A DNA stretch of 64,000 bases from Camelus ferus (Eukaryota), in NCBI RefSeq assembly GCF_009834535.1, contig NC_045728.1:7564001-7628000 (forward strand). Reading direction: 5' to 3'. The first letter of the stretch is position 1. Every line of letters begins with the position of its first letter. The notes below the pieces were generated by a model. The model had not been told where the DNA came from, searched no databases, and saw nothing but the letters and a program-made list of their open reading frames with translations. The position numbers and the translations under genes were made by a program. Of this stretch, positions 59 through 53,719 are shown piece by piece.

Positions 59-991
59 ATGGCTCCTGGAAATGGTTCTTTTGTGACTGAATTCATTCTG
101 TTGGGTTTAACAGACCAACCAGATCTCCAGCTCCTCTTGTTCCTCCTGTTCCTAGTAATGTATATGGTCAGCGTGTTGGGAAATTTGGGCTTAATGACTC
201 TCATTGGGCTTAGTTCACACCTACACACCCCCATGTACTTTTTCCTCTTCAACTTGTCCTTTGTAGACTTCTGTTATTCTTCAGTATTTACTCCAAAAAT
301 GCTGACGGATTTCTTATCAAAGAAGAATGTTATCTCTTACATGGGGTGCATGACTCAGTTCTACTTTTTCTGTTTTTTTGTCGTTTCTGAATGCTATGTC
401 CTGACATCAATGGCCTACGATCGCTATGTGGCCATCTGTCGCCCACTGTTGTATAACATTGCCATGTCCCCTGCAGTGTGTTCTAGGCTTGTGCTTGGTT
501 CATACTTGATGGCATTTTTTGATACCATGACGCTCACTGGATGTCTGCTGAGACTGACCTTCTGTGATGCAAATACCATCAACCATTATTTTTGTGACAT
601 CCTCCCTCTACTCCAGCTCTCCTGCACAGGCACCTATGTCAGTGAGCTGGCGGTTTTCATTGTGGGAGGCATCAACATAATTTTTCCCAGTCTCACCATC
701 TCTGTCTCGTATGGTCTCATCCTGTCCAGCATCCTCCGCATAAGTTCCAGGGAGGGCAGGTCCAAAGCCTTCAGTACCTGCAGCTCCCACGTAGTTGTTG
801 TTTTTCTGTTCTTTGGATCGGGTGCATTTATGTATCTTAAACCATCTTCTGCTAGGTCTATGGATGAGGGGAAAATCTCTTCTGTCTTCTACACGAATGT
901 GGTTCCCATGATTAACCCCTTCATCTACAGTTTGCGGAACAAAGATGTTAAAATTGCTCTGAGAAAAACCCTGGAGGGGAGAAAATTTTGA
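59..991 (+). CDS. Olfactory receptor, class II, OR8B-like, intact (310 aa)
   Basis: Intronless ORF with the OR motifs [30 protein letters not shown] and [15 protein letters not shown]; N-glycosylation sequon NGS; pyrimidine tract plus AG acceptor at 41-42. Subfamily assigned from recalled OR8B sequences. Confidence 0.95.
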   Translation: MAPGNGSFVTEFILLGLTDQPDLQLLLFLLFLVMYMVSVLGNLGLMTLIGLSSHLHTPMYFFLFNLSFVDFCYSSVFTPKMLTDFLSKKNVISYMGCMTQFYFFCFFVVSECYVLTSMAYDRYVAICRPLLYNIAMSPAVCSRLVLGSYLMAFFDTMTLTGCLLRLTFCDANTINHYFCDILPLLQLSCTGTYVSELAVFIVGGINIIFPSLTISVSYGLILSSILRISSREGRSKAFSTCSSHVVVVFLFFGSGAFMYLKPSSARSMDEGKISSVFYTNVVPMINPFIYSLRNKDVKIALRKTLEGRKF

Positions 992-7430: not shown

Positions 7431-8354
7431 TCAAAACGTTTTCCTACTCAGGGTTTTCCTCGGAGCAAGTTTTACGTCTTTGTTCCTCAAGCTGTAAATT
7501 AGGGGGTTCAGCAAGGGAACCATATTGGTGTAAAAGACAGAAGAGATTTTTCCTTCATCCATAGACACAGAAGAAGATGGTTTGAGATACATAAATGCAA
7601 TTGCTCCAAAGAAGAGAGAAACAGCAGTTATATGGGAACTGCAGGTACTGAAGGCTTTGGACCTGGAGCTGATATGGAGGATGTTGGAGAGGATGAAACC
7701 ATAAGTGACAAGTATGGTGATACTGGGCACAGTGACATCGATTCCGGCTATAATGGAAGCTACCAGCTCGGGGGTATAGGTGCTGGTGCAGGAGAGCTGG
7801 AGCAGAGGGAAAATGTCACAGAAGTAGTGGTTGATGGTACTTGCATCACAGAAAGCCAATCTTAGCATGCATCCAGGGAGAGCCATGGCACCAGAAGATG
7901 CCAGGAGGTGTGAACCAAGCATAATGCTGGAACACACTTTAGGAGACATGGAAATGTTGTACATAAGTGGGTGACAGATGGCCACATACCGATCATAAGC
8001 CATTGCTGTCAGCACATAGCACTCAGAGATACCAAAAAAACTGAAAAAGTAAAGCTGGGTCATGCACCCCGTGTAGGAGATAATATTCTTCTTTGATATG
8101 AAGTTAATCAGCATTTTGGGTGTGAATACAGAAGAATAACAGAGATCGATGAAGGACAAATTAAAGAGGAAAAAGTACATGGGGGTGTGGAGGTGTGAAT
8201 TCAGCCCAATTAGGATTATCAAGCCCAAATTTCCCAACACAGTGACCATATACATTACTAGAAACAGGAAGAACAGAGGGAGCTGGAGATCTGGTTGGTC
8301 TGTTAATCCCACCAAAATGAATTCAGTCACGAAAGAGCCATTTCCAGGAGCCAT
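7431..8354 (-). CDS. Olfactory receptor, OR8B-like, open frame (307 aa) with a 3-codon deletion in IC3
   Basis: True ATG at 8354 (MAPGNGSF...); the ORF track starts at an upstream GTG. All OR motifs are present, but [12 protein letters not shown] lacks EGR. Acceptor AG at 8373-8372. Confidence 0.9.
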   Translation of the reverse strand: MAPGNGSFVTEFILVGLTDQPDLQLPLFFLFLVMYMVTVLGNLGLIILIGLNSHLHTPMYFFLFNLSFIDLCYSSVFTPKMLINFISKKNIISYTGCMTQLYFFSFFGISECYVLTAMAYDRYVAICHPLMYNISMSPKVCSSIMLGSHLLASSGAMALPGCMLRLAFCDASTINHYFCDIFPLLQLSCTSTYTPELVASIIAGIDVTVPSITILVTYGFILSNILHISSRSKAFSTCSSHITAVSLFFGAIAFMYLKPSSSVSMDEGKISSVFYTNMVPLLNPLIYSLRNKDVKLAPRKTLSRKTF

Positions 8355-9289
8355 CCTCTCTCTGAGGACATCTGTGAGCACAGGAGAAAAGGGTTACACA
8401 GAGGACAAACTCCCTTTCCCATAACATTTTCTCATACAGTGTGATGTGTGTGCTGGGAATGACTGATACTAGCTCAACCTGGGCTCACAGAATTTCTCTA
8501 CCGTTAACATGAAAAAGAGTGGCATGAACTTTCCCTTTTAAAGTCTTTCTAAGCTAAGTAGCATAAAGCATCAAAATTTGACCTGTGGAGTGAAGGAAGC
8601 TGCTGCCATGTGCAGATGTAACTATTGGAAAAACCGAAAGGAGTAGGGAAAAGAAGTTTGGACCAGGACAGAATTTTCCTTCTCTCATTTCACCGTTTCT
8701 TCAATCCCCTGGACCCTCCCTCTCCAGTAAAACCAGAGGCAGCAACCCCAAAAGCCTGGTGCTTGACTGTGATGCAGATTATTCCTGATGGGGTAGAAGC
8801 CAAGAAGATTGTTTCTAATCAGAAAAGAGGGGAAGGAACCAAAGTCTAGGAAAGGGGCCAAAGTCACAGAGTAAAAGCTATAAATGAGCAGAATGAGCGT
8901 TCCATCCAAGGAGAGGGAACCTACTGACTGAGAAACTCCATCCCCTGAATGATTCTGAACATTCCCTGCTCTCCCCTCAAACGGATTTCTCTGCAAGATT
9001 CACCCTAGTGTTAGGTCTGCAAAAATGGGAAAGAAAGTGTCATGTCTTAGGTCCTCAGTCTTCCATCTCAAACAAGGAAAACACGAACTGTGTTGTCCCT
9101 TCAGTACCGTTAAGGTGGAAAAACAGAAAGGAAATATTTGTGCATGTACACTCACACACATTTTTCTGTAAAAATAGTGACATGCTAAAAATACAATACT
9201 CAATAAGACAAATTGCTACTCTCATAACGCTTACATTCTACCATGTAGGTGTGTCAGTAAACCAACAAAGAAATAGATACAGAACTTAG

Positions 9290-18033: not shown

Positions 18034-18966
18034 TCACTTCTTAGGAAGGAAGGCCAGGTGCTGTAGCACCTTCCTCAGAGAATATTTCACTTCCTTATTT
18101 CTCAGGCTGTAGATTAAGGGGTTCAGCACGGGGGCGACCAGGTTATTCAGAACCTGAACAGTTGCATTAAGCCAGGGGTTAGGGGTAGGCTGCAGGTAGA
18201 TGAGAACCACTGGCATAAAAGAGAGAAGGATGGCAGTGAGGTGGGCACTGCAGGTGGAGAAGGCGCGTCGCCGGCCCTCTGCAGAGCGGATCTGCAGGAT
18301 GGAGTAGACGATGCGACAGTAGGAGGTGAGGATGAGGAGGAAGCAGGTGAGGGGCATGAGGCCCACACTGATGAGCCCCACCATCTCCAGGGCCGAGGTG
18401 TCTGCACAAGCCAGCTTCAGCATCACTGGGATGTCACAGAAGTAATAGTCCACCTCGTTGGGGCCGCAGTAGGGCAGCTGGAAGGTGAGAGTAGTTAGAA
18501 AGGTGGCCTGAACGCAGCCAAAAAGTGAGGTCCCCATGGCCAGGATGGCACACGCTCTGTGACTCATGATTATCGTGTAGCGCAGAGGGTGACATACGGC
18601 CACAAAGCGGTCGTAAGCCATCACCGTTTACAGGAAGCACTCTGTGCAGCCCAGGAAATGGTAGAAGAAGAGCTGGGACACGCAGCCTGCATAGGAGACG
18701 GCTCGGCTGTTCCCTGAGAGGTAGAAGAGCATCTTGGGGGAACTCACGGAAGGAAAAAATATGTCACACACAGAGAGTTTACACAGGAAGAAGTACATGG
18801 GGGTGTGAAGCCGAGAGGAGGAGACAATCGCCAGTAGGATGAACAGGTTGCCTATAAGCGTGAGGACGTAGAAGGACAGAAACAGGACAAAGAGCGTGGC
18901 CTCCAGGCCGTGTGTGTGCGGGATGCCCAGCAGAATAAACGCGGTCACCACCGAGGCATTCCTCAT
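18034..18966 (-). pseudogene. OR10D1-like receptor with a single in-frame nonsense codon (Y113*)
   Basis: The two ORF-track pieces are in the same frame. TAA at 18630-18628 replaces the TAC of the 52-kb paralogue. Acceptor ttctaacAG lies 2 nt before the ATG. Confidence 0.9.
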
Positions 18967-19199
18967 CTCTGTTAGAACATTGGACTTCAAAAGAGAACAC
19001 AGATCTCCAAGGCGTGAACACTGGTCAAACTGAGAAGCTATGTAATAAATAATAAGCAATTATTTAATTATCACGTTATGTGTTCTTTTAGCAAGTGTAC
19101 CTGACAAACGACATTAATAACCTAAATACGTTCAAAGGAAGATTATAAAGATGTAAAGTGGCTTTAAATCATCCCATCGGAGAATAGTTTATTAAAAAT

Positions 19200-28140: not shown

Positions 28141-29077
28141 TCACAAGAATATCCTTCTTTCTAGCACTTTCTTTAGGGCAACATTGACATCTTTATTCCG
28201 AAGGCTATAGATCAGGGGATTCAGCATGGGCACAATAATGGTATAAAACACAGAGGACACTTTCCCTTGGTCCATGGAACTGACTGAGGATGGCTGCAGG
28301 TACATGAATGCAGCAGATCCAAAAAAGATCACAACTGCCAACATATGGGAGCTGCACGTGCTGAAGGCTTTGGATCTGCCTTCCTTGGAGCGGATGCGGA
28401 GGATGCTGGCAATGATGAAGATGTAGGAGCTGAGGATGGTCAGGATGGGGACAAAGATGTTAAGGGCTCCAAAACATAGAATGAGTAGTTCATTGACATA
28501 GGTGCTAGAGCAGGAGAGCTTTAGGAGGGGAAGAAGATCACAGAAGTAATGGTTGATCACATCAAGTTTGCAGAAGTGAACCCTAAGCATGCAGCCTGTA
28601 TGAGAGAATGCACACACCAAGGCTATAATATACACTCCCAAAATCAGAGAGAAACAGGCCTGATGGGACATGATGACGTTATAAAGCAAGGGGTTACAGA
28701 TGGCAACGTAGCAGGTCATAGGCCATCGCAGCCAGCATGAAACACTCCGAGACGGCAAAAACAAGGAAGAAATAGAGCTGGGTCATGCATTCAGGGTAGG
28801 AGATGGTATTCTTCTTTGTCACAAAGTTCCCCAGCATTTTGGGGGTAATGACGGTGGAATGACAGACATCAATGAAGGACAAGCTACTGAGGAAACAGTA
28901 CATGGGGGTGTGCAGGTGAGAACTGAGCCCAACCAGTGTGATCATGCCCAGGTTCCCCACCACTGTGACCACATAGATTCCCAGGAAAAGGAAGAAGAGG
29001 GGCAGCTGGAGTTCTGGCTGTTCTGTTAGTCCAGCGAGGATGAACTCAGTCACTGTGGAATGATTTCCTTCTGTCAT
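28141..29077 (-). pseudogene. OR8G-like (OR8G1/8G5-like) receptor with a single +1 frameshift in MAYDRY
   Basis: 937 nt = 936+1; GAC-CTGC-TAC instead of GAC-CGC-TAC (extra A at + strand 28713). Removing it gives a 311-aa OR with OR8G-type motifs ([44 protein letters not shown]). Confidence 0.9.
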
Positions 29078-48151: not shown

Positions 48152-49045
48152 TCAGGGCTCCCTTGACATCTTTGTCAGAGTGTAGATGTTGGGGTTTAGT
48201 GTGGGAGTGATGACATTTCCAAAGATTTGCATTGGGGTTGCCAGAACCTCGCTCAAAGATGGCTGGCTATAGATGAGTGCACAGGGCCCAAAGAACACCG
48301 TGACCCCTGAGAGGTGGGAAACACGGGTGGATGCCACCTTGTGCCCCCCTTCAGCAGTGTGCATCTGTAGGATGGCGATGACAATGTGGACATAGGAGGT
48401 CAGGATGAGGAGGAAACACATTGTGGGCAGAAGGCTAGTGTTGGTGAAGCTCACTGTCTCAATAATGAGGGTGTCACCACAGGCCAATTTGACAACAGGA
48501 AAGATGTCACAAAAGAAATAGTCTATCTCATTAGACCCACAGTATGGCAAGTGGAAGGTCAGTGCAGTGAGCATTGTGGCTTGAAAAGAGCTCACACACC
48601 AGATGCCAGCAGCCATCCCGGCACACACCTGACGGTTCACGATGATGGTGTAACGCAGTGGGTGGCAAATGGCTACAAACCAGTCCTAGGCCATCACCGA
48701 GTAGAGCAGGCACTCACTGCAGCCCAGGAAGTGGCAGCAAAAGACCTGGGACACGCAGCCCCCCAGGGAGATGACGCGGTTCTTCACCAGCAGGTTGGCG
48801 AACATCTTTGGGGTGCTCACAGCAGAGAAACCAATATCCAGCACAGAGAGGTTACAAAGAAAGAAACACATAGGAGTGTGGAGGCAGGAATCAAACATCA
48901 CAGCCACCAGGATGAGTGGGTTTCCTAGCAGAGCGCAGAGGTGGAAGGTGAGGAACACAACAGAGGGCACAGTTTGCTGGCCTTCTGCATGTGGGATGCC
49001 CGACAGGGTGAACTCTTTGACCGAAGTGTGATTCTTTACCTCCAT
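48152..49045 (-). pseudogene. OR10-family (OR10D/10G/10N-like) pseudogene
   Basis: In-frame TAG at 48688-48686 (MA*DWF for MAYDRF); an apparent 4-nt deletion in LRNKDV near 48175 shifts the C-terminus; many motif substitutions (HKVASTRVSHL for RKAFSTCxSHL). Confidence 0.9.
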
Positions 49046-49966
49046 ATAAGTTAGATTTTATCCTGGAAAGAGGGAAAAGTGACAATAAGTTAAGGACCCA
49101 AGGCACCGAAATCCACTGCCTGCTACCTACAGATTCATGAAAAGAAAGACAGCGGTAGACCGTGTTCGTGCAAGGGTAACGTGCGTGGTGACGCAGACCG
49201 CGGGAGCGGCAAGTACCCTAGACGGAGGTGCGGCCTCGGGTGAGGACTGGATGCAGGCAACTGGACTGATGTGTGGACAGGTGTTATTTATTATTATCAG
49301 ACAGAGAAGAGCAAGTGACAAAGAGAGTAGCAGCAGTGAGAATCCACCTGGTCAGGTCTCGGAACCCGCTTTCTAGCCCACGCTTGAATGCAGCGTCTCG
49401 GGAACCGCTGCTGCTGTAGCCACTCCTCTCCAAACGTCCTCTGACCCGCAGTCCTTCTCTGGCCTCCCAGGTCCTGGACTTTGATTCTCTTCCTTTGCTC
49501 TGCCCCTGTGGATGAAATTCTCTGCTAGATGGGTCATCCGATTTGGGATTTCTCCCACTGACATTTTTCTATCCAAATTCTTCTTACAGTGTCCCTTTAA
49601 TTGTAGAACACGGAAAAGTCTTATTCCACCACCAAAATCAGCCTGGGCCCCCACACCCCGGGCTGGGCCTGGCGTTCTGGGGTCCTGCTTAGGTGAAAAG
49701 AGAGCTCAAGACACTAACTGAAGACATGAGAGCTGCCAGCTTGTCTAGAACCCCCGGGATAGGCAGAGAGGTCAGTTTGTTTAAGGAGAAACAGCACCTT
49801 TGTGACAGGCTTCCAACCAGGGAACAAAGCACTAAGCTGGAGGAAGGACCCTGAAAACAGGTCAGATGAATTTTAGTTTTCCTACAAGGACATTCACTCA
49901 TAGATGACAAATAGTTAAGAGATACTCATGCAAGGAATTATCTCTCACCACTGCTCAGCCCCCCAC

Positions 49967-50300: not shown

Positions 50301-51564
50301 AATGAAAGGGAATTGGGTCCCGTCTTTTTTTATTACAAATTGTTCTAGTCTGACCATCTGAGCAGCTACAACCAGGAAATTGAGGAACGGGAAGAGGTCT
50401 TCAAATGGACTCAGAGAGGCTAGAGAAGGAAGGGTTTGGGATGCACTAAATTTGACATCATTTGAGATATATTTTCACCTTCCTGTTTAGATTCTTATTT
50501 ACTGAAAAACAGAGGAGAATCAGCACAGAGGGTTTTTAGGAGCTGGAGTGACCAGGCAAGAGTCTGTCTCTGCTCCAGAAGCAAGCGCTAGCCCGCCCCA
50601 TGCCTGGAGACGCACACGCAGTGCTGCTGATCTGCTCTGGCGGGTTCCGTGGCTGCTCTCTGATCCTGAGTACAGAGACAGGGGAGAAACTGGTCTCTGC
50701 CTCTACCCCCTTCTCTTCCATCATCCTCTTTCCAGTGTCCTTCCGTCTCTACATCATAGTTAGAATAATCTTCACAGCAACTGTATTCCCCACGTGTGGT
50801 TGTGTTCCCAGTGAATTCAGTCATGAAGACAATAGTGCCCTGTGTTGAAGGAGCAGACTTCATCCTTAGTGTATTTCAGCCAAAAAGTAAAGAAGTGTAG
50901 GAATGAGGACCAGAGTCAAACCCTTTCAGTGAACAGAGAAGCCAAAGATACGAAACAATGACAGCTTGGACCCAGCATTGCCTCCTGGCTGTACCGCGCA
51001 CAGCGGAGCCAGGTCCGGGTTCCTAACACGGCGTCACGGCGCAGTCACGGCCGTGGCTGCCCCACTGGCCCTCCCCCAGGCCCGTCCACGTGCTGCGCTT
51101 GTACAGCCGGAGCCTGCTTCAGGTCTGAGCCCCACAGACGGGGCTGTAGGGGAGACGGTAACCAGCACCTCTGCTTCCCTCGTGAGAGATGCCTCGGGTC
51201 CCTGCCTGAAGTCCTCTTTGCACAGTGTATTCATGTTTTCTAGGGACCTGCTTGTTGCCTTGAGCGTCCACCTCTCCCACTTTCCCCAACCGCTCCTAGA
51301 CCCGTAAAATGACGGCTTGTGCAATGCAGGCCCTGGAGGAGACAGTCACTGCGGCTGAGATGAAGACGCTCCAGGGCGAAGGGAAGACGAAAGGGAGGGG
51401 GGATGCAGGAAGGTGAAGAGCACAGGGCTGAGAAGCCGAGGGCCCGCCTGTACTGCCGCTGGGGAGAGCGCCCCGCTTCCCGCATCAGCCGTGGGACGTC
51501 CTCGGGTCCCAGCGTCAGAAAGCCGGCCCTGCAGCCTTCCCTCCGCGCGTGTCCTCCAACAGGT

Positions 51565-51630
51565 CGCTTTAACTCTTCCCGTCTTAGTCCCCACGTGGCA
51601 AAATGGAGACACCCATAATGATACCTGTCC
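51565..51630 (+). mobile_element. MIR core fragment, GC-shifted
   Basis: gtcgctttaactcttcccgtcttagtccccacgtggcaaaatggagacacccataatgatacct; same relative position as the MIR 3' of the 18-kb paralogue. Confidence 0.5.
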
Positions 51631-51694
51631 TCTCCGATTACAAAAATATTTGTGAGAACCGTACACAGATGTTCTATAAACTGGGAAGTGCAGG

Positions 51695-52651
51695 TCAGGT
51701 GTCGCCTGCCGACCTCCACAGCTGCTCAGGAAGGAAGCCCAGCGGGCGCAGAACTCTCCTCAGCGATGATTTCACCTCCTTATTCCGGAGGCTGTAGATC
51801 AGGGGGTTCAGCATGGGGGTGACCAGGTTATTCAGGACCTGGACAGTTGCATCCACCCAGGGGCTGGGGGTGGGCCTGAGGTAGATGAGGACCACCGGCA
51901 TGTAGAACAGCAGGATGGCGGCCAGGTGGGCACTGCAGGTGGAGAAGGCGCGTCGCCGGCCCTCTGCAGAGCGGATCTGCAGGATGGAGTAGACGATGCG
52001 ACAGTAGGAGGTGAGGATGAGGAGGAAGCAGGTGAGGGGCATGAGGCCCACACTGATGAGCCCCACCATCTCCAGGGCCGAGGTGTCTGCACAAGCCAGC
52101 TTCAGCATCACTGGGATGTCACAGAAGTAATAGTCCACCTCGTTGGGGCCGCAGTAGGGCAGCTGGAAGGTGAGAGTAGTTAGAAAGGTGGCCTGAACGC
52201 AGCCAAAAAGTGAGGTCCCCATGGCCAGGATGGCACACGCTCTGTGACTCATGATTATCGTGTAGCGCAGAGGGTGACATACGGCCACAAAGCGGTCGTA
52301 AGCCATCACCGTGTACAGGAAGCACTCTGTGCAGCCCAGGAAATGGTAGAAGAAGAGCTGGGACACGCAGCCTGCATAGGAGACGGCTCGGCTGTTCCCT
52401 GAGAGGTAGAAGAGCATCTTGGGGGAACTCACGGAAGGAAAAAATATGTCACACACAGAGAGTTTACACAGGAAGAAGTACATGGGGGTGTGAAGCCGAG
52501 AGGAGGAGACAATCGCCAGTAGGATGAGCAGGTTGCCTATAAGCGTGAGGACGTAGAAGGACAGAAACAGGACAAAGAGCGTGGCCTCCAGGCCGTGTGT
52601 GTGCGGGATGCCCAGCAGAATAAACGCGGTCACCACCGAGGCATTCCTCAT
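51695..52651 (-). CDS. Olfactory receptor, OR10D1-like (mouse Olfr149-like), intact (318 aa)
   Basis: Full OR motifs; close to the recalled Olfr149-type sequence (CDIFFPSVSSPKMLFYLSGN, LRPTPSPWxDATVQ). Acceptor tctgactttctcacAG lies 2 nt before the ATG. Confidence 0.92.
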   Translation of the reverse strand: MRNASVVTAFILLGIPHTHGLEATLFVLFLSFYVLTLIGNLLILLAIVSSSRLHTPMYFFLCKLSVCDIFFPSVSSPKMLFYLSGNSRAVSYAGCVSQLFFYHFLGCTECFLYTVMAYDRFVAVCHPLRYTIIMSHRACAILAMGTSLFGCVQATFLTTLTFQLPYCGPNEVDYYFCDIPVMLKLACADTSALEMVGLISVGLMPLTCFLLILTSYCRIVYSILQIRSAEGRRRAFSTCSAHLAAILLFYMPVVLIYLRPTPSPWVDATVQVLNNLVTPMLNPLIYSLRNKEVKSSLRRVLRPLGFLPEQLWRSAGDT

Positions 52652-53719
52652 AGCTGTGAGAAAGTCAGACCTCGAAGAGGGGCCTGAGACACCAAAGTCT
52701 GAACGCCAGTATCAGATTATTAAGCTTCTCGGTATTGAGTGCTTCGGCTGTGTTTTTAACAAGGAACAACCACCTTCTTGTGAATGGCAGGCTCTACATA
52801 AAAATCCCGGGTAATAAGGAAAGGCTGCTTTAGAGCCAGTCTGTCCACCTCCCGGAAAGAGCTGCCCTCTGTGACAAGATCAGAAGTTTTGGAATCTGTT
52901 CAAAACATTCTCATGTTAAGTTAGAAACCTTCTTACAGTTGTTTAATTCATGGATTTACTCTCTTCAGGCATACTTATATTTTGAACTCTCACGGTATCC
53001 CTGAGAAGCAAACTCCCACTCTGCAGTACCCTCTGAAAGATACCAGAACACTTGTGTTAGAATCAGAACGCTTGATTTGAAGCCCTGCTTCGCCACTTAA
53101 TAGCTATAGTAAAGACAATTTATACAGTATCTTTCATAGACATAATTTTATCCTGCACGGAATGAAAAATACAATTGTTATACCAACAACAGAGATACCC
53201 TGGTGTCACGGTAAAGTTCATGAAATTTCTGTGAAAGTATCTGGCAAAAATCATAAATCCTAATGAAAAGTGTTCCTTTATGTTTCTTAAATGTACTCAA
53301 GTAACTTTCTTTAATGTTACTATTCTATAGTTATGTGCAAATAAATGTTTTATGAAGTAACATTATTAAAGAAACTTGTGTCAGATCCTCTTCAGGGTAC
53401 ATCCTTCCAGACTGGGGAGCTGTAATACCCCCAGCTCTCTCAGGAGATGCTGCTCTGGTTCTTCTGGTCCTTTTAACCTTTTCTAAGTGGACTTACAGCG
53501 ACTCTGAAATACTAAGCAAAAGAAATAGTAACAGCAAGCAAAGCATCAAATTCATGTTACTGCGAGAAAAAGAGAAATGCACTAACGCACATGGCAGAAA
53601 GTTGAAGAACAGCTCCACTGAGGGATGTTAAAGAATTCACAGCAGGGTATAGTGTCTGGGAAGCACAGGGCTCTTCCTCTCATCATTCATTCAGTAATAA
53701 GAAATACACATACACCATT

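What the first reader, a model, noticed from the sequence alone, without database searches (positions are those of the whole stretch)
18239..18966. Recent coding-exon gene conversion between two ancient OR10D1-like paralogues makes a chimeric receptor
Seen: 18239-18966 and 51924-52651 align without gaps at a constant offset of 33,685 bp and differ at only 2 of 728 nt by eye (18628 T vs 52313 G; 18843 A vs 52528 G). Overlapping antisense and alternative-frame ORFs in the track are also essentially identical, so silent sites are shared. The remaining 205 coding nt differ at about 47 positions, and the introns upstream show no obvious similarity. The tract starts exactly at the ATG, 2 nt after each gene's own splice acceptor, and ends sharply after AFSTCSAHL (codon about 243). 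Known: OR clusters evolve by birth-and-death with occasional ectopic gene conversion. Inference: the 52-kb gene donated TM1-TM5/IC3 to the 18-kb gene, which kept its own TM6-TM7/C-tail and promoter. The direction follows from the GC/CpG-rich tract matching the donor's surroundings while sitting in AT-rich DNA at 18 kb. The boundary at the exon start fits homology-limited DNA conversion; cDNA-templated conversion is a less likely alternative.
Basis: partly seen in the sequence, partly recalled or inferred. Interest (0 to 1): 0.75.

Follow-up and report, generated by a model that had tools for sequence, protein, structure and literature searches.

The report
Concerted evolution of two camel odorant-receptor genes
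Two old olfactory-receptor genes 33.7 kb apart in a camel genome share a copied-over first 728 bases, one episode of repeated gene conversion also seen in other camelids, and the recipient copy here carries a premature stop, so this is a known process rather than a newly made receptor.

Summary
Window 18239-18966 and 51924-52651 differ at 2 of 728 nt. The next 205 coding nt differ at 47 (Fisher p = 1e-30). Both genes lie on the minus strand.

Interlocus gene conversion is strongly supported:
- Trees for the tract and for the 3' part conflict (AU p = 4e-12 and 2e-4).
- Silent sites are homogenised.
- Each gene keeps its own orthologous flanks.
- The same architecture occurs in five other camelid assemblies, so it is not a mis-assembly.

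1. One of the two differences (18628) turns Tyr113 TAC into TAA. The 18-kb copy is therefore a pseudogene allele in this genome. It is intact in the dromedary, Bactrian and alpaca references.
2. The event is not private or very recent. All three Camelus species share the 728|729 boundary. Alpaca has its own tract ending near nt 650. All 11 fixed Camelus/alpaca differences are shared by both paralogues of a lineage, so this is recurrent concerted evolution.
3. The direction 52 kb to 18 kb is demonstrated only for codons 217-243, where alpaca, pig and hippo keep the ancestral 18-type sequence.

Protein trees over 54 mammals suggest the same N-terminal homogenisation in many placental lineages. 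Type-specific residues occur only from codon 249 onward. This is a known kind of process and is moderately interesting.

The parts
18034..18966 (-). 18-kb OR10D1-like gene ('18-type'): 310 codons, interrupted by TAA at codon 113. Pseudogene allele in this genome.
   Evidence: translation; both pieces hit Pfam 7tm_4. Orthologues are intact in C. bactrianus, C. dromedarius and alpaca.
18239..18966 (-). Converted tract in the recipient (CDS nt 1-728, codons 1-243: N-terminus through the AFSTCSAHL motif).
   Evidence: 2/728 differences from 51924-52651. Breakpoint at nt 728.
18628..18630 (-). Premature stop TAA (Tyr113 TAC in every other copy examined). Window 18628 is its third base.
18841..18843 (-). 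Codon 42, TTC (Phe) here against CTC (Leu) in the 52-kb copy. This is the second of the two tract differences.
18034..18238 (-). 18-type-specific 3' part (TM6-TM7-tail). It is 23% diverged from the 52-kb gene and closest to the hippo and pig 18-type.
18967..19036 (-). The 18-kb gene's own upstream flank with the putative splice acceptor. Orthologous to the alpaca, hippo and pig 18-type flanks and not converted.
51695..52651 (-). 52-kb OR10D1B-like gene ('52-type'), intact 318-aa ORF.
51924..52651 (-). Donor copy of the tract (CDS nt 1-728).
   Evidence: Direction for nt 650-728.
51695..51923 (-). 52-type-specific 3' part: GC3 0.84, with a W-to-S-biased derived state.
52652..52721 (-). The 52-kb gene's own upstream flank with the putative acceptor (cacag|ct ATG). 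Orthologous to the alpaca and sperm-whale flanks.

Best explanation
Two ancient tandem paralogues of the OR10D1/OR10D1B (mouse Olfr149-like) class II olfactory-receptor group lie 33.7 kb apart in the same orientation. They undergo recurrent non-reciprocal interlocus gene conversion confined to the first 650-728 nt of the single coding exon. In the Camelus stem lineage the 52-kb gene served as template, shown for codons 217-243 and inferred for the whole tract. Its sequence overwrote codons 1-243 of the 18-kb gene. The 18-kb gene kept its own upstream flank, its own TM6-TM7-tail and its own 3' flank. An independent conversion ending near nt 650 homogenised the same pair in the alpaca lineage. 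The 5' edge sits at the ATG, where alignable homology ends. The 3' edge sits where the paralogues are already about 20% diverged. Since the last homogenisation each copy has collected 0-2 private changes (substitutions or a small indel). In this genome (identical over 3.6 kb to Camelus ferus KB016450.1) one of them is a TAC-to-TAA nonsense mutation at codon 113, which inactivates the chimeric 18-kb gene. Shown: the tract, the tree conflict, the shared derived sites, the polarity at 650-728 and the stop codon. Inferred: the DSB-repair/heteroduplex mechanism, a single stem-Camelus event, and direction for nt 1-649.
For: The tract has 2/728 differences against 47/205 beyond it, with silent sites equally identical. 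DNA trees: for nt 1-648 the paralogues cluster by genus (alpaca pair 96/93, Camelus six 95/92, all camelids 100/100), and AU rejects camelid 18-type monophyly at p = 3.9e-12. For nt 729-933 the 18-type clade contains pig and hippo, the 52-type clade contains sperm whale, and AU rejects camelid monophyly at p = 2.4e-4. Of 11 fixed Camelus/alpaca differences in nt 1-649, six are derived in Camelus and five in alpaca. Every one is present in both paralogues of that lineage, and six are at third codon positions. At 650-728, alpaca 18-type differs from all 52-types at 15-16 sites but shares 10-11 of those states with the pig and hippo 18-type. Camelus 18-type copies carry the 52-type states. The same architecture is found in C. 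bactrianus GCA_048773025.1, C. dromedarius GCA_000803125.3 and GCA_036321535.1, alpaca GCA_048564905.1 and C. ferus GCA_000311805.2. A 2,693-nt Logan contig matches window 19757-17066 with no mismatches (one gap). It runs from the unique 5' flank through the tract into the unique 3' flank. Upstream and downstream flanks are type-specific and orthologous across artiodactyls. Gene conversion producing mosaic or homogenised ORs is an established process (review PMC1995454).
Against: No read-level check was possible. Logan contigs can switch paralogues inside the tract, as L009 does. Within Camelus all tract differences are singletons. The data therefore cannot separate one stem-lineage event from later independent events that share the boundary. 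Direction for nt 1-649 cannot be polarised, because outgroup N-terminal parts are not type-specific. The only artiodactyl 52-type outgroup, the sperm whale, is a low-quality model and is equidistant from both types in nt 729-933.
Confidence: 0.9

Rival explanations
1. Assembly artefact: reads of the 52-kb gene were wrongly used to build the 5' two-thirds of the 18-kb gene.
For: A 728-nt identical repeat cannot be spanned by short reads. One Logan contig (L009) is a chimera that joins the 52-kb 5' flank to the 18-type 3' end. The read-level test could not be run.
Against: The same mosaic is present at the orthologous locus in five other assemblies of four species. These carry species-specific private differences and a different boundary in alpaca. 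The two window copies differ at two sites. The 18-kb-specific states (T124, A339) recur in independent Logan contigs.
Confidence: 0.02
2. Ongoing conversion within each living Camelus species, rather than one event in the Camelus stem. The shared 728|729 boundary would then be re-created each time because heteroduplex is rejected where identity drops.
For: Paralogue divergence in the tract (2-3 changes in 728 nt, about 0.3-0.4%) is no larger than between-species divergence. win52 is identical to dro18 over nt 1-640. Phe42 occurs in the 18-kb copy here but in the 52-type protein of the older C. ferus annotation (P0124). That could reflect exchange of a polymorphism between the paralogues.
Against: No tract variant is shared by both paralogues of one Camelus species to the exclusion of the other species. 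All differences are private singletons, which gives a star tree. The P0124 observation comes from a short-read assembly that may have mixed the copies.
Confidence: 0.3
3. Purifying selection alone, without DNA transfer, keeps the N-terminal two-thirds identical.
For: The N-terminal part of ORs carries conserved motifs, and the family is conserved at protein level (85-90% across mammals).
Against: Third codon positions are identical at 241 of 242 sites. Lineage-specific synonymous substitutions (nt 15, 219, 252, 267, 393, 441) are shared by both paralogues. The same region differs by 10-12% from pig, hippo and whale.
Confidence: 0.01
4. A single unequal crossover (NAHR) created a hybrid gene, or a spliced cDNA of the 52-kb gene templated the repair.
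For: The genes are in direct orientation 33.7 kb apart. The tract begins at the ATG, close to the presumed splice acceptor.
Against: A single crossover would exchange one flank and change copy number. Here the 18-kb gene keeps both its orthologous 5' and 3' flanks, and the 33.7-kb spacing is conserved in C. bactrianus (33,678 bp). The nucleotides between the presumed acceptor and the ATG were not transferred, and the tract ends inside the exon. Nothing therefore requires a cDNA template.
Confidence: 0.04

Closest known systems
Gene conversion among clustered olfactory-receptor paralogues (primate OR cluster on 17p13, Sharon et al. 1999, as summarised in the review PMC1995454)
   Same: Non-reciprocal transfer between tandem OR coding exons produces mosaic or homogenised receptors, and pseudogenes are involved.
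   Different: Here the conversion is repeatedly confined to the same 5' two-thirds of the exon, in two camelid lineages and apparently in many placental lineages. The TM6-tail region stays as two trans-species types. No paper found in four literature searches describes this pair.
Partial concerted evolution of long-lived duplicate pairs with bounded tracts (for example primate gamma-globin genes, red/green opsins, RHD/RHCE, CYP21A2/CYP21A1P). Cited from general knowledge, not tested here.
   Same: Ancient duplicates carry a sharply bounded homogenised segment next to diverged segments. A pseudogene copy can act as a potential donor of inactivating mutations.
   Different: This is a single-exon GPCR gene with a 33.7-kb spacing. 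There is no flanking homology at all outside the exon.
OR10D1/OR10D1B (mouse Olfr149 group), class II OR family 10 subfamily D
   Same: Best hits are named OR10D1B-like or olfactory receptor 149-like (97% to alpaca, 85-91% across placentals). Pfam 7tm_4 E = 1e-48.
   Different: The 18-kb copy in this genome is interrupted by a stop codon.

Membership tests
Interlocus (ectopic) gene conversion | A sharply bounded tract of near-identity between paralogues, flanked on both sides by diverged sequence | tested here: met
   2/728 against 47/205 on the 3' side, about 55% falling to random identity on the 5' side, and a max-chi2 breakpoint at nt 728
Interlocus (ectopic) gene conversion | Synonymous sites are homogenised as much as non-synonymous sites, so selection is not the cause | tested here: met
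   1/242 third positions differ in the tract against 26/69 outside it
Interlocus (ectopic) gene conversion | Phylogenetic discordance between the tract and the adjacent sequence | tested here: met
   DNA trees and AU tests, p = 3.9e-12 and 2.4e-4
Interlocus (ectopic) gene conversion | Non-reciprocal transfer without a change in copy number: both loci keep their own flanks | tested here: met
   Type-specific orthologous flanks. Spacing of 33,685 bp here and 33,678 bp in C. bactrianus
Interlocus (ectopic) gene conversion | The structure is confirmed by molecules that span the repeat | not testable with these tools
There is only indirect support from other assemblies and Logan contig L008
Concerted evolution (recurrent homogenisation) | Lineage-specific derived substitutions are shared by both paralogues in each of two or more lineages | tested here: met
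   Six sites derived in Camelus and five in alpaca, all shared by both paralogues. At protein level, same-species or same-lineage pairs cluster in sloth, guinea pig, shrews and mustelids
Class II olfactory receptor, family 10 subfamily D | 7tm_4 domain above the curated cutoff, with closest named relatives OR10D1B/Olfr149 | tested here: met
   Pfam PF13853 at 166.6 bits against a cutoff of 27. Hit names
Functional (intact) receptor gene, 18-kb copy | An uninterrupted ORF of about 310 codons | tested here: not met
   TAA at codon 113 in the window, in L011 and in Logan contigs L008-L010

The most novel reading that the evidence does not exclude
The camel tract may be the local expression of a very old regime. 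In most placental lineages the OR10D1-type pair has been repeatedly homogenised over codons 1 to about 215-245. TM6, EC3, TM7 and the tail have persisted as two trans-species types for roughly the age of placental mammals. This implies a stable conversion boundary at the IC3/TM6 junction, perhaps held by selection for two different TM6 activation motifs (SF-MP versus FY-MP at residues 249-250). Evidence so far is at protein level only: N-terminal and C-terminal trees over 54 sequences conflict (AU p = 3e-7). Same-species or same-lineage pairs cluster in the N-terminal tree for sloth, guinea pig, the shrew Sorex and mustelids with starred support, and for the shrew Suncus with weaker support. 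No type-diagnostic residue lies before position 249.
Probability: 0.6. Interest if true: 0.55.

Novelty: new member of a known kind. Interest (0 to 1): 0.4.

Why it matters
This is a clean natural example of partial-exon concerted evolution in an olfactory-receptor pair.

- Its tract ends can be dated by species comparison: nt 650 in alpaca and nt 728 in Camelus.
- Its direction can be polarised for part of the tract.
- It warns that orthology calls, dN/dS estimates and duplication dates for OR10D-type genes will be wrong if whole-gene trees are used.
- A pseudogene 99.7% identical to its functional neighbour over 728 nt is a standing donor, or a possible beneficiary, in future conversions.
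- If the placental-wide pattern holds at DNA level, the pair becomes a useful system. It would allow asking why a conversion boundary stays fixed at the TM6 junction for tens of millions of years, by selection on TM6-TM7 function or by homology-dependent rejection.

Tried and rejected
1. The read-level check failed. The look-up of sequencing runs returned 24 runs, all kept as Logan contigs.
2. The unrelated 43-kb OR10 gene also has a GC-richer 5' part (0.54 against 0.46). Direction was established from alpaca, pig and hippo states instead, with GC3 as secondary support.
3. Polarising the direction for nt 1-649 with outgroups failed. Pig and hippo 18-type and sperm-whale 52-type are about equally distant from the tract (65-77 differences in 640 nt).
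4. A third donor was rejected. The 43-kb and 48-kb OR10 genes are only about 70% identical.
5. Four literature searches found no description of this pair or of camel OR conversion.
6. The earlier-findings search by words returned nothing.
7. The neighbouring OR8-like pair (59-991 and 7431-8381) shows uniform divergence and no tract.

Full report
**Observation.** The window holds an olfactory-receptor cluster. OR8-like ORFs lie at 59-991 (+), 7431-8381 (-) and 28141-28764 (-). OR10-like ORFs lie at about 18 kb, 43 kb, 48 kb and 52 kb, all on the minus strand.

The two genes of the finding are:
- 51695-52651 (-), an intact 318-aa ORF.
- 18034-18966 (-), 310 codons.

At a constant offset of 33,685 bp, 18239-18966 and 51924-52651 differ at exactly two positions: 18628 T/G and 18843 A/G. 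The next 205 coding nt differ at 47 positions. This is far beyond chance. Fisher p is 1e-30, and the max-chi2 breakpoint falls exactly at CDS nt 728. Third codon positions differ at 1 of 242 sites inside the tract and 26 of 69 outside it.

Outside the exon, blastn finds no similarity between the two loci. Only about 33 nt upstream of the ATG remain weakly alignable, at about 55% identity. Both proteins are class II ORs. Pfam 7tm_4 scores 166.6 bits for the 52-kb gene, and both pieces of the 18-kb gene also match. Their best named relatives are OR10D1B / olfactory receptor 149-like.

The difference at 18628 is the third base of codon 113. It reads TAC (Tyr) in the 52-kb gene and TAA in the 18-kb gene. 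The 18-kb gene is therefore interrupted just before the MAYDRF motif. The other difference is Leu42Phe.

The TAA recurs in several places:
- The older Camelus ferus assembly, L011. It matches the window's 18-kb locus over about 3.6 kb with no mismatches, so it is probably the same species or the same source.
- Three Logan contigs from three runs: L008, L009 and L010.

It is absent from the C. bactrianus, two C. dromedarius and alpaca assemblies, where the orthologue is an intact 310-aa ORF. A database protein identical to the 18-kb product but with Tyr113 also exists (P0129). The nonsense change is therefore young and possibly polymorphic.

**Not an artefact.** I fetched the orthologous genes from these assemblies:
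- alpaca: L001 and L002;
- C. bactrianus: L003 and L004;
- C. dromedarius: L005, L006 and L007.

Every species has the same pair, spaced 33,678 bp apart in C. bactrianus. In every species the 5' part of the two genes is nearly identical and the 3' part differs at 45-50 of 205 nt. Logan contig L008 (2,693 nt) matches window 19757-17066 with no mismatches and one gap. It runs from the unique 5' flank through the tract into the unique 3' flank.

Logan contig L009 joins the 52-kb gene's 5' flank to the 18-type 3' end, switching between CDS nt 231 and 339. That is most simply an assembler switch inside the repeat, so short-read contigs alone are not proof.

For CDS 1-648:
- all camelid copies form one clade (100/100);
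- inside it the two alpaca paralogues pair (96/93);
- the six Camelus copies form a star (95/92);
- AU rejects monophyly of the camelid 18-type genes, p = 3.9e-12.

For CDS 729-933:
- camelid 18-type genes group with the pig and hippo 18-type genes;
- camelid 52-type genes group with the sperm-whale gene (91/88);
- AU rejects camelid monophyly, p = 2.4e-4.

The upstream 70 nt and the sequence after the stop codon are type-specific. They are plainly orthologous between camelids and hippo/pig for the 18-type, and between camelids and sperm whale for the 52-type. The two loci are therefore old, and only the exon's 5' part has been exchanged.

Eleven sites in nt 1-649 are fixed differences between Camelus and alpaca. 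Polarised with pig, hippo and whale, six are derived in Camelus and five in alpaca. Every derived state is present in both paralogues of that lineage, and six of the eleven sites are at third codon positions. Homogenisation therefore happened independently in both lineages after they split. This is concerted evolution, not a single event.

**Boundaries, direction and age.** In all three Camelus species the tract ends at 728|729. In alpaca the best breakpoint is at nt 650. Alpaca 18-type carries 15-16 differences from every 52-type copy between 651 and 702, and 10-11 of those states are shared with the pig and hippo 18-type genes. That stretch is therefore the ancestral 18-type sequence. Camelus replaced it with 52-type sequence, so the direction 52 kb to 18 kb is shown for codons 217-243.

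For nt 1-649 the direction cannot be polarised, because outgroup N-terminal parts are not type-specific. GC3 gives weaker support for the 52-kb locus as the main donor:

| Segment | GC3 |
|---|---|
| Camelid tract | 0.76 |
| Pig and hippo 18-type, same region | 0.63-0.66 |
| Camelid 18-type own 3' part | 0.63 |
| Camelid 52-type own 3' part | 0.84 |

Changes derived in the 52-type are 16 W-to-S against 3 S-to-W. This agrees with the scan's neighbouring note on a gBGC-like footprint (s1-149991).

On age: within Camelus all tract differences are private singletons, 0-2 changes per copy counting the bac52 indel as one. Tract divergence between paralogues is about 0.3-0.4%. Flank divergence from the window is 0.43% to C. 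bactrianus, 0.66% to dromedary and 3.3% to alpaca. The simplest reading is one conversion in the Camelus stem, at or shortly before the species radiation. Later independent events that share the boundary cannot be excluded.

**Mechanism (inferred).** I infer repair of a break in the 18-kb exon using the 52-kb exon as template, or heteroduplex correction. The 5' limit sits at the ATG, where homology ends. The 3' limit sits where identity has already dropped to about 80%.

The Camelus event nevertheless advanced 78 nt into sequence that was about 18% diverged, so the boundary is not absolute. A single unequal crossover is excluded, because both flanks of the 18-kb gene are its own and the spacing is conserved. 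Nothing requires a cDNA template.

**Wider pattern (protein level only).** Among 54 mammalian sequences the C-terminal 67 residues split into an 18-type and a 52-type clade. Several species contribute one member to each clade.

The N-terminal 215 residues instead cluster by species or lineage:
- sloth pair, 96/82;
- guinea-pig pair, 100/94;
- Sorex pair, 99/86;
- mink with European mink, 100/92;
- Suncus pair, with lower support (86/22).

AU rejects 52-type monophyly for the N-terminal part at p = 3e-7. Same-species pairs differ two to five times more per site in 244-310 than in 1-215. Residues that distinguish the two types occur only at position 249 and beyond: 249, 250, 259, 263, 267, 295, 302, 304, 305 and 310. 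None lies before 249.

This suggests the camel tract is one episode of a placental-wide regime with a boundary near the IC3/TM6 junction. The type assignment comes from the same C-terminal columns. DNA-level confirmation outside Artiodactyla was not possible with the look-ups left.

**Comparison with what is known.** Reviews already list gene conversion as a source of mosaic and homogenised ORs (PMC1995454, citing Sharon et al. 1999). Four searches found nothing on this pair or on camel OR conversion. I therefore class the finding as a new member of a known kind.

The claim of a new chimeric receptor does not hold for this genome's allele. It holds for the genus only in the modest sense that Camelus extended the shared region by 26 codons.

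Noticed in passing
L009:1-2303 (Logan contig; matches window 53001-52652, then the tract, then 18238-17012): The contig joins the 52-kb gene's 5' flank and 5' CDS (with the C. bactrianus-type 52-copy indel at CDS 227-231) to the TAA stop, the 18-type 3' part and the 18-kb 3' flank. This is the structure of an NAHR deletion product. It is more likely an assembler switch inside the identical tract.
   Followed up: partly
window 48200-49150 (-): A fourth OR10-like gene with an in-frame stop inside the MAYDRF motif ('SVMA*DWF'). It is about 68% identical to the tract genes and is probably a pseudogene.
   Followed up: partly
protein P0124 (C. ferus annotation EPY88794.1): This annotated 1039-aa fusion of VWA5A with the 52-type OR carries Phe42, which in the window is found only in the 18-kb copy. 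This reflects either exchange of a polymorphism between the paralogues or mixing of the copies in a short-read assembly.
   Followed up: no
L004:3227-3231 region (C. bactrianus 52-type, CDS 227-231): A private 3-nt deletion plus two adjacent substitutions gives a 317-aa product (Pro-Pro to Trp region). It is also present in Logan contig L009.
   Followed up: no
window 50695-51694: The 1 kb downstream of the 52-kb gene is GC-rich (0.56) with CpG o/e 0.61, inside an otherwise AT-rich cluster. Derived changes in the 52-type 3' CDS are strongly W-to-S biased (16:3). This agrees with the scan's gBGC note s1-149991.
   Followed up: partly
window 59-991 (+), 7431-8381 (-), 28141-28764 (-): Three OR8-like genes. 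The first two are intact and diverge evenly (7-19 differences per 60 nt), with no conversion tract. The 28-kb ORF begins only at the MAYDRY region, so that gene may be disrupted upstream.
   Followed up: partly
L014:2037-2039 (sperm whale 52-type): The position of the camelid ATG reads GTG, so the annotated low-quality 338-aa model starts further upstream. In CDS 729-933 this gene is equidistant from the 18-type and the 52-type, so it may itself be a mosaic.
   Followed up: no
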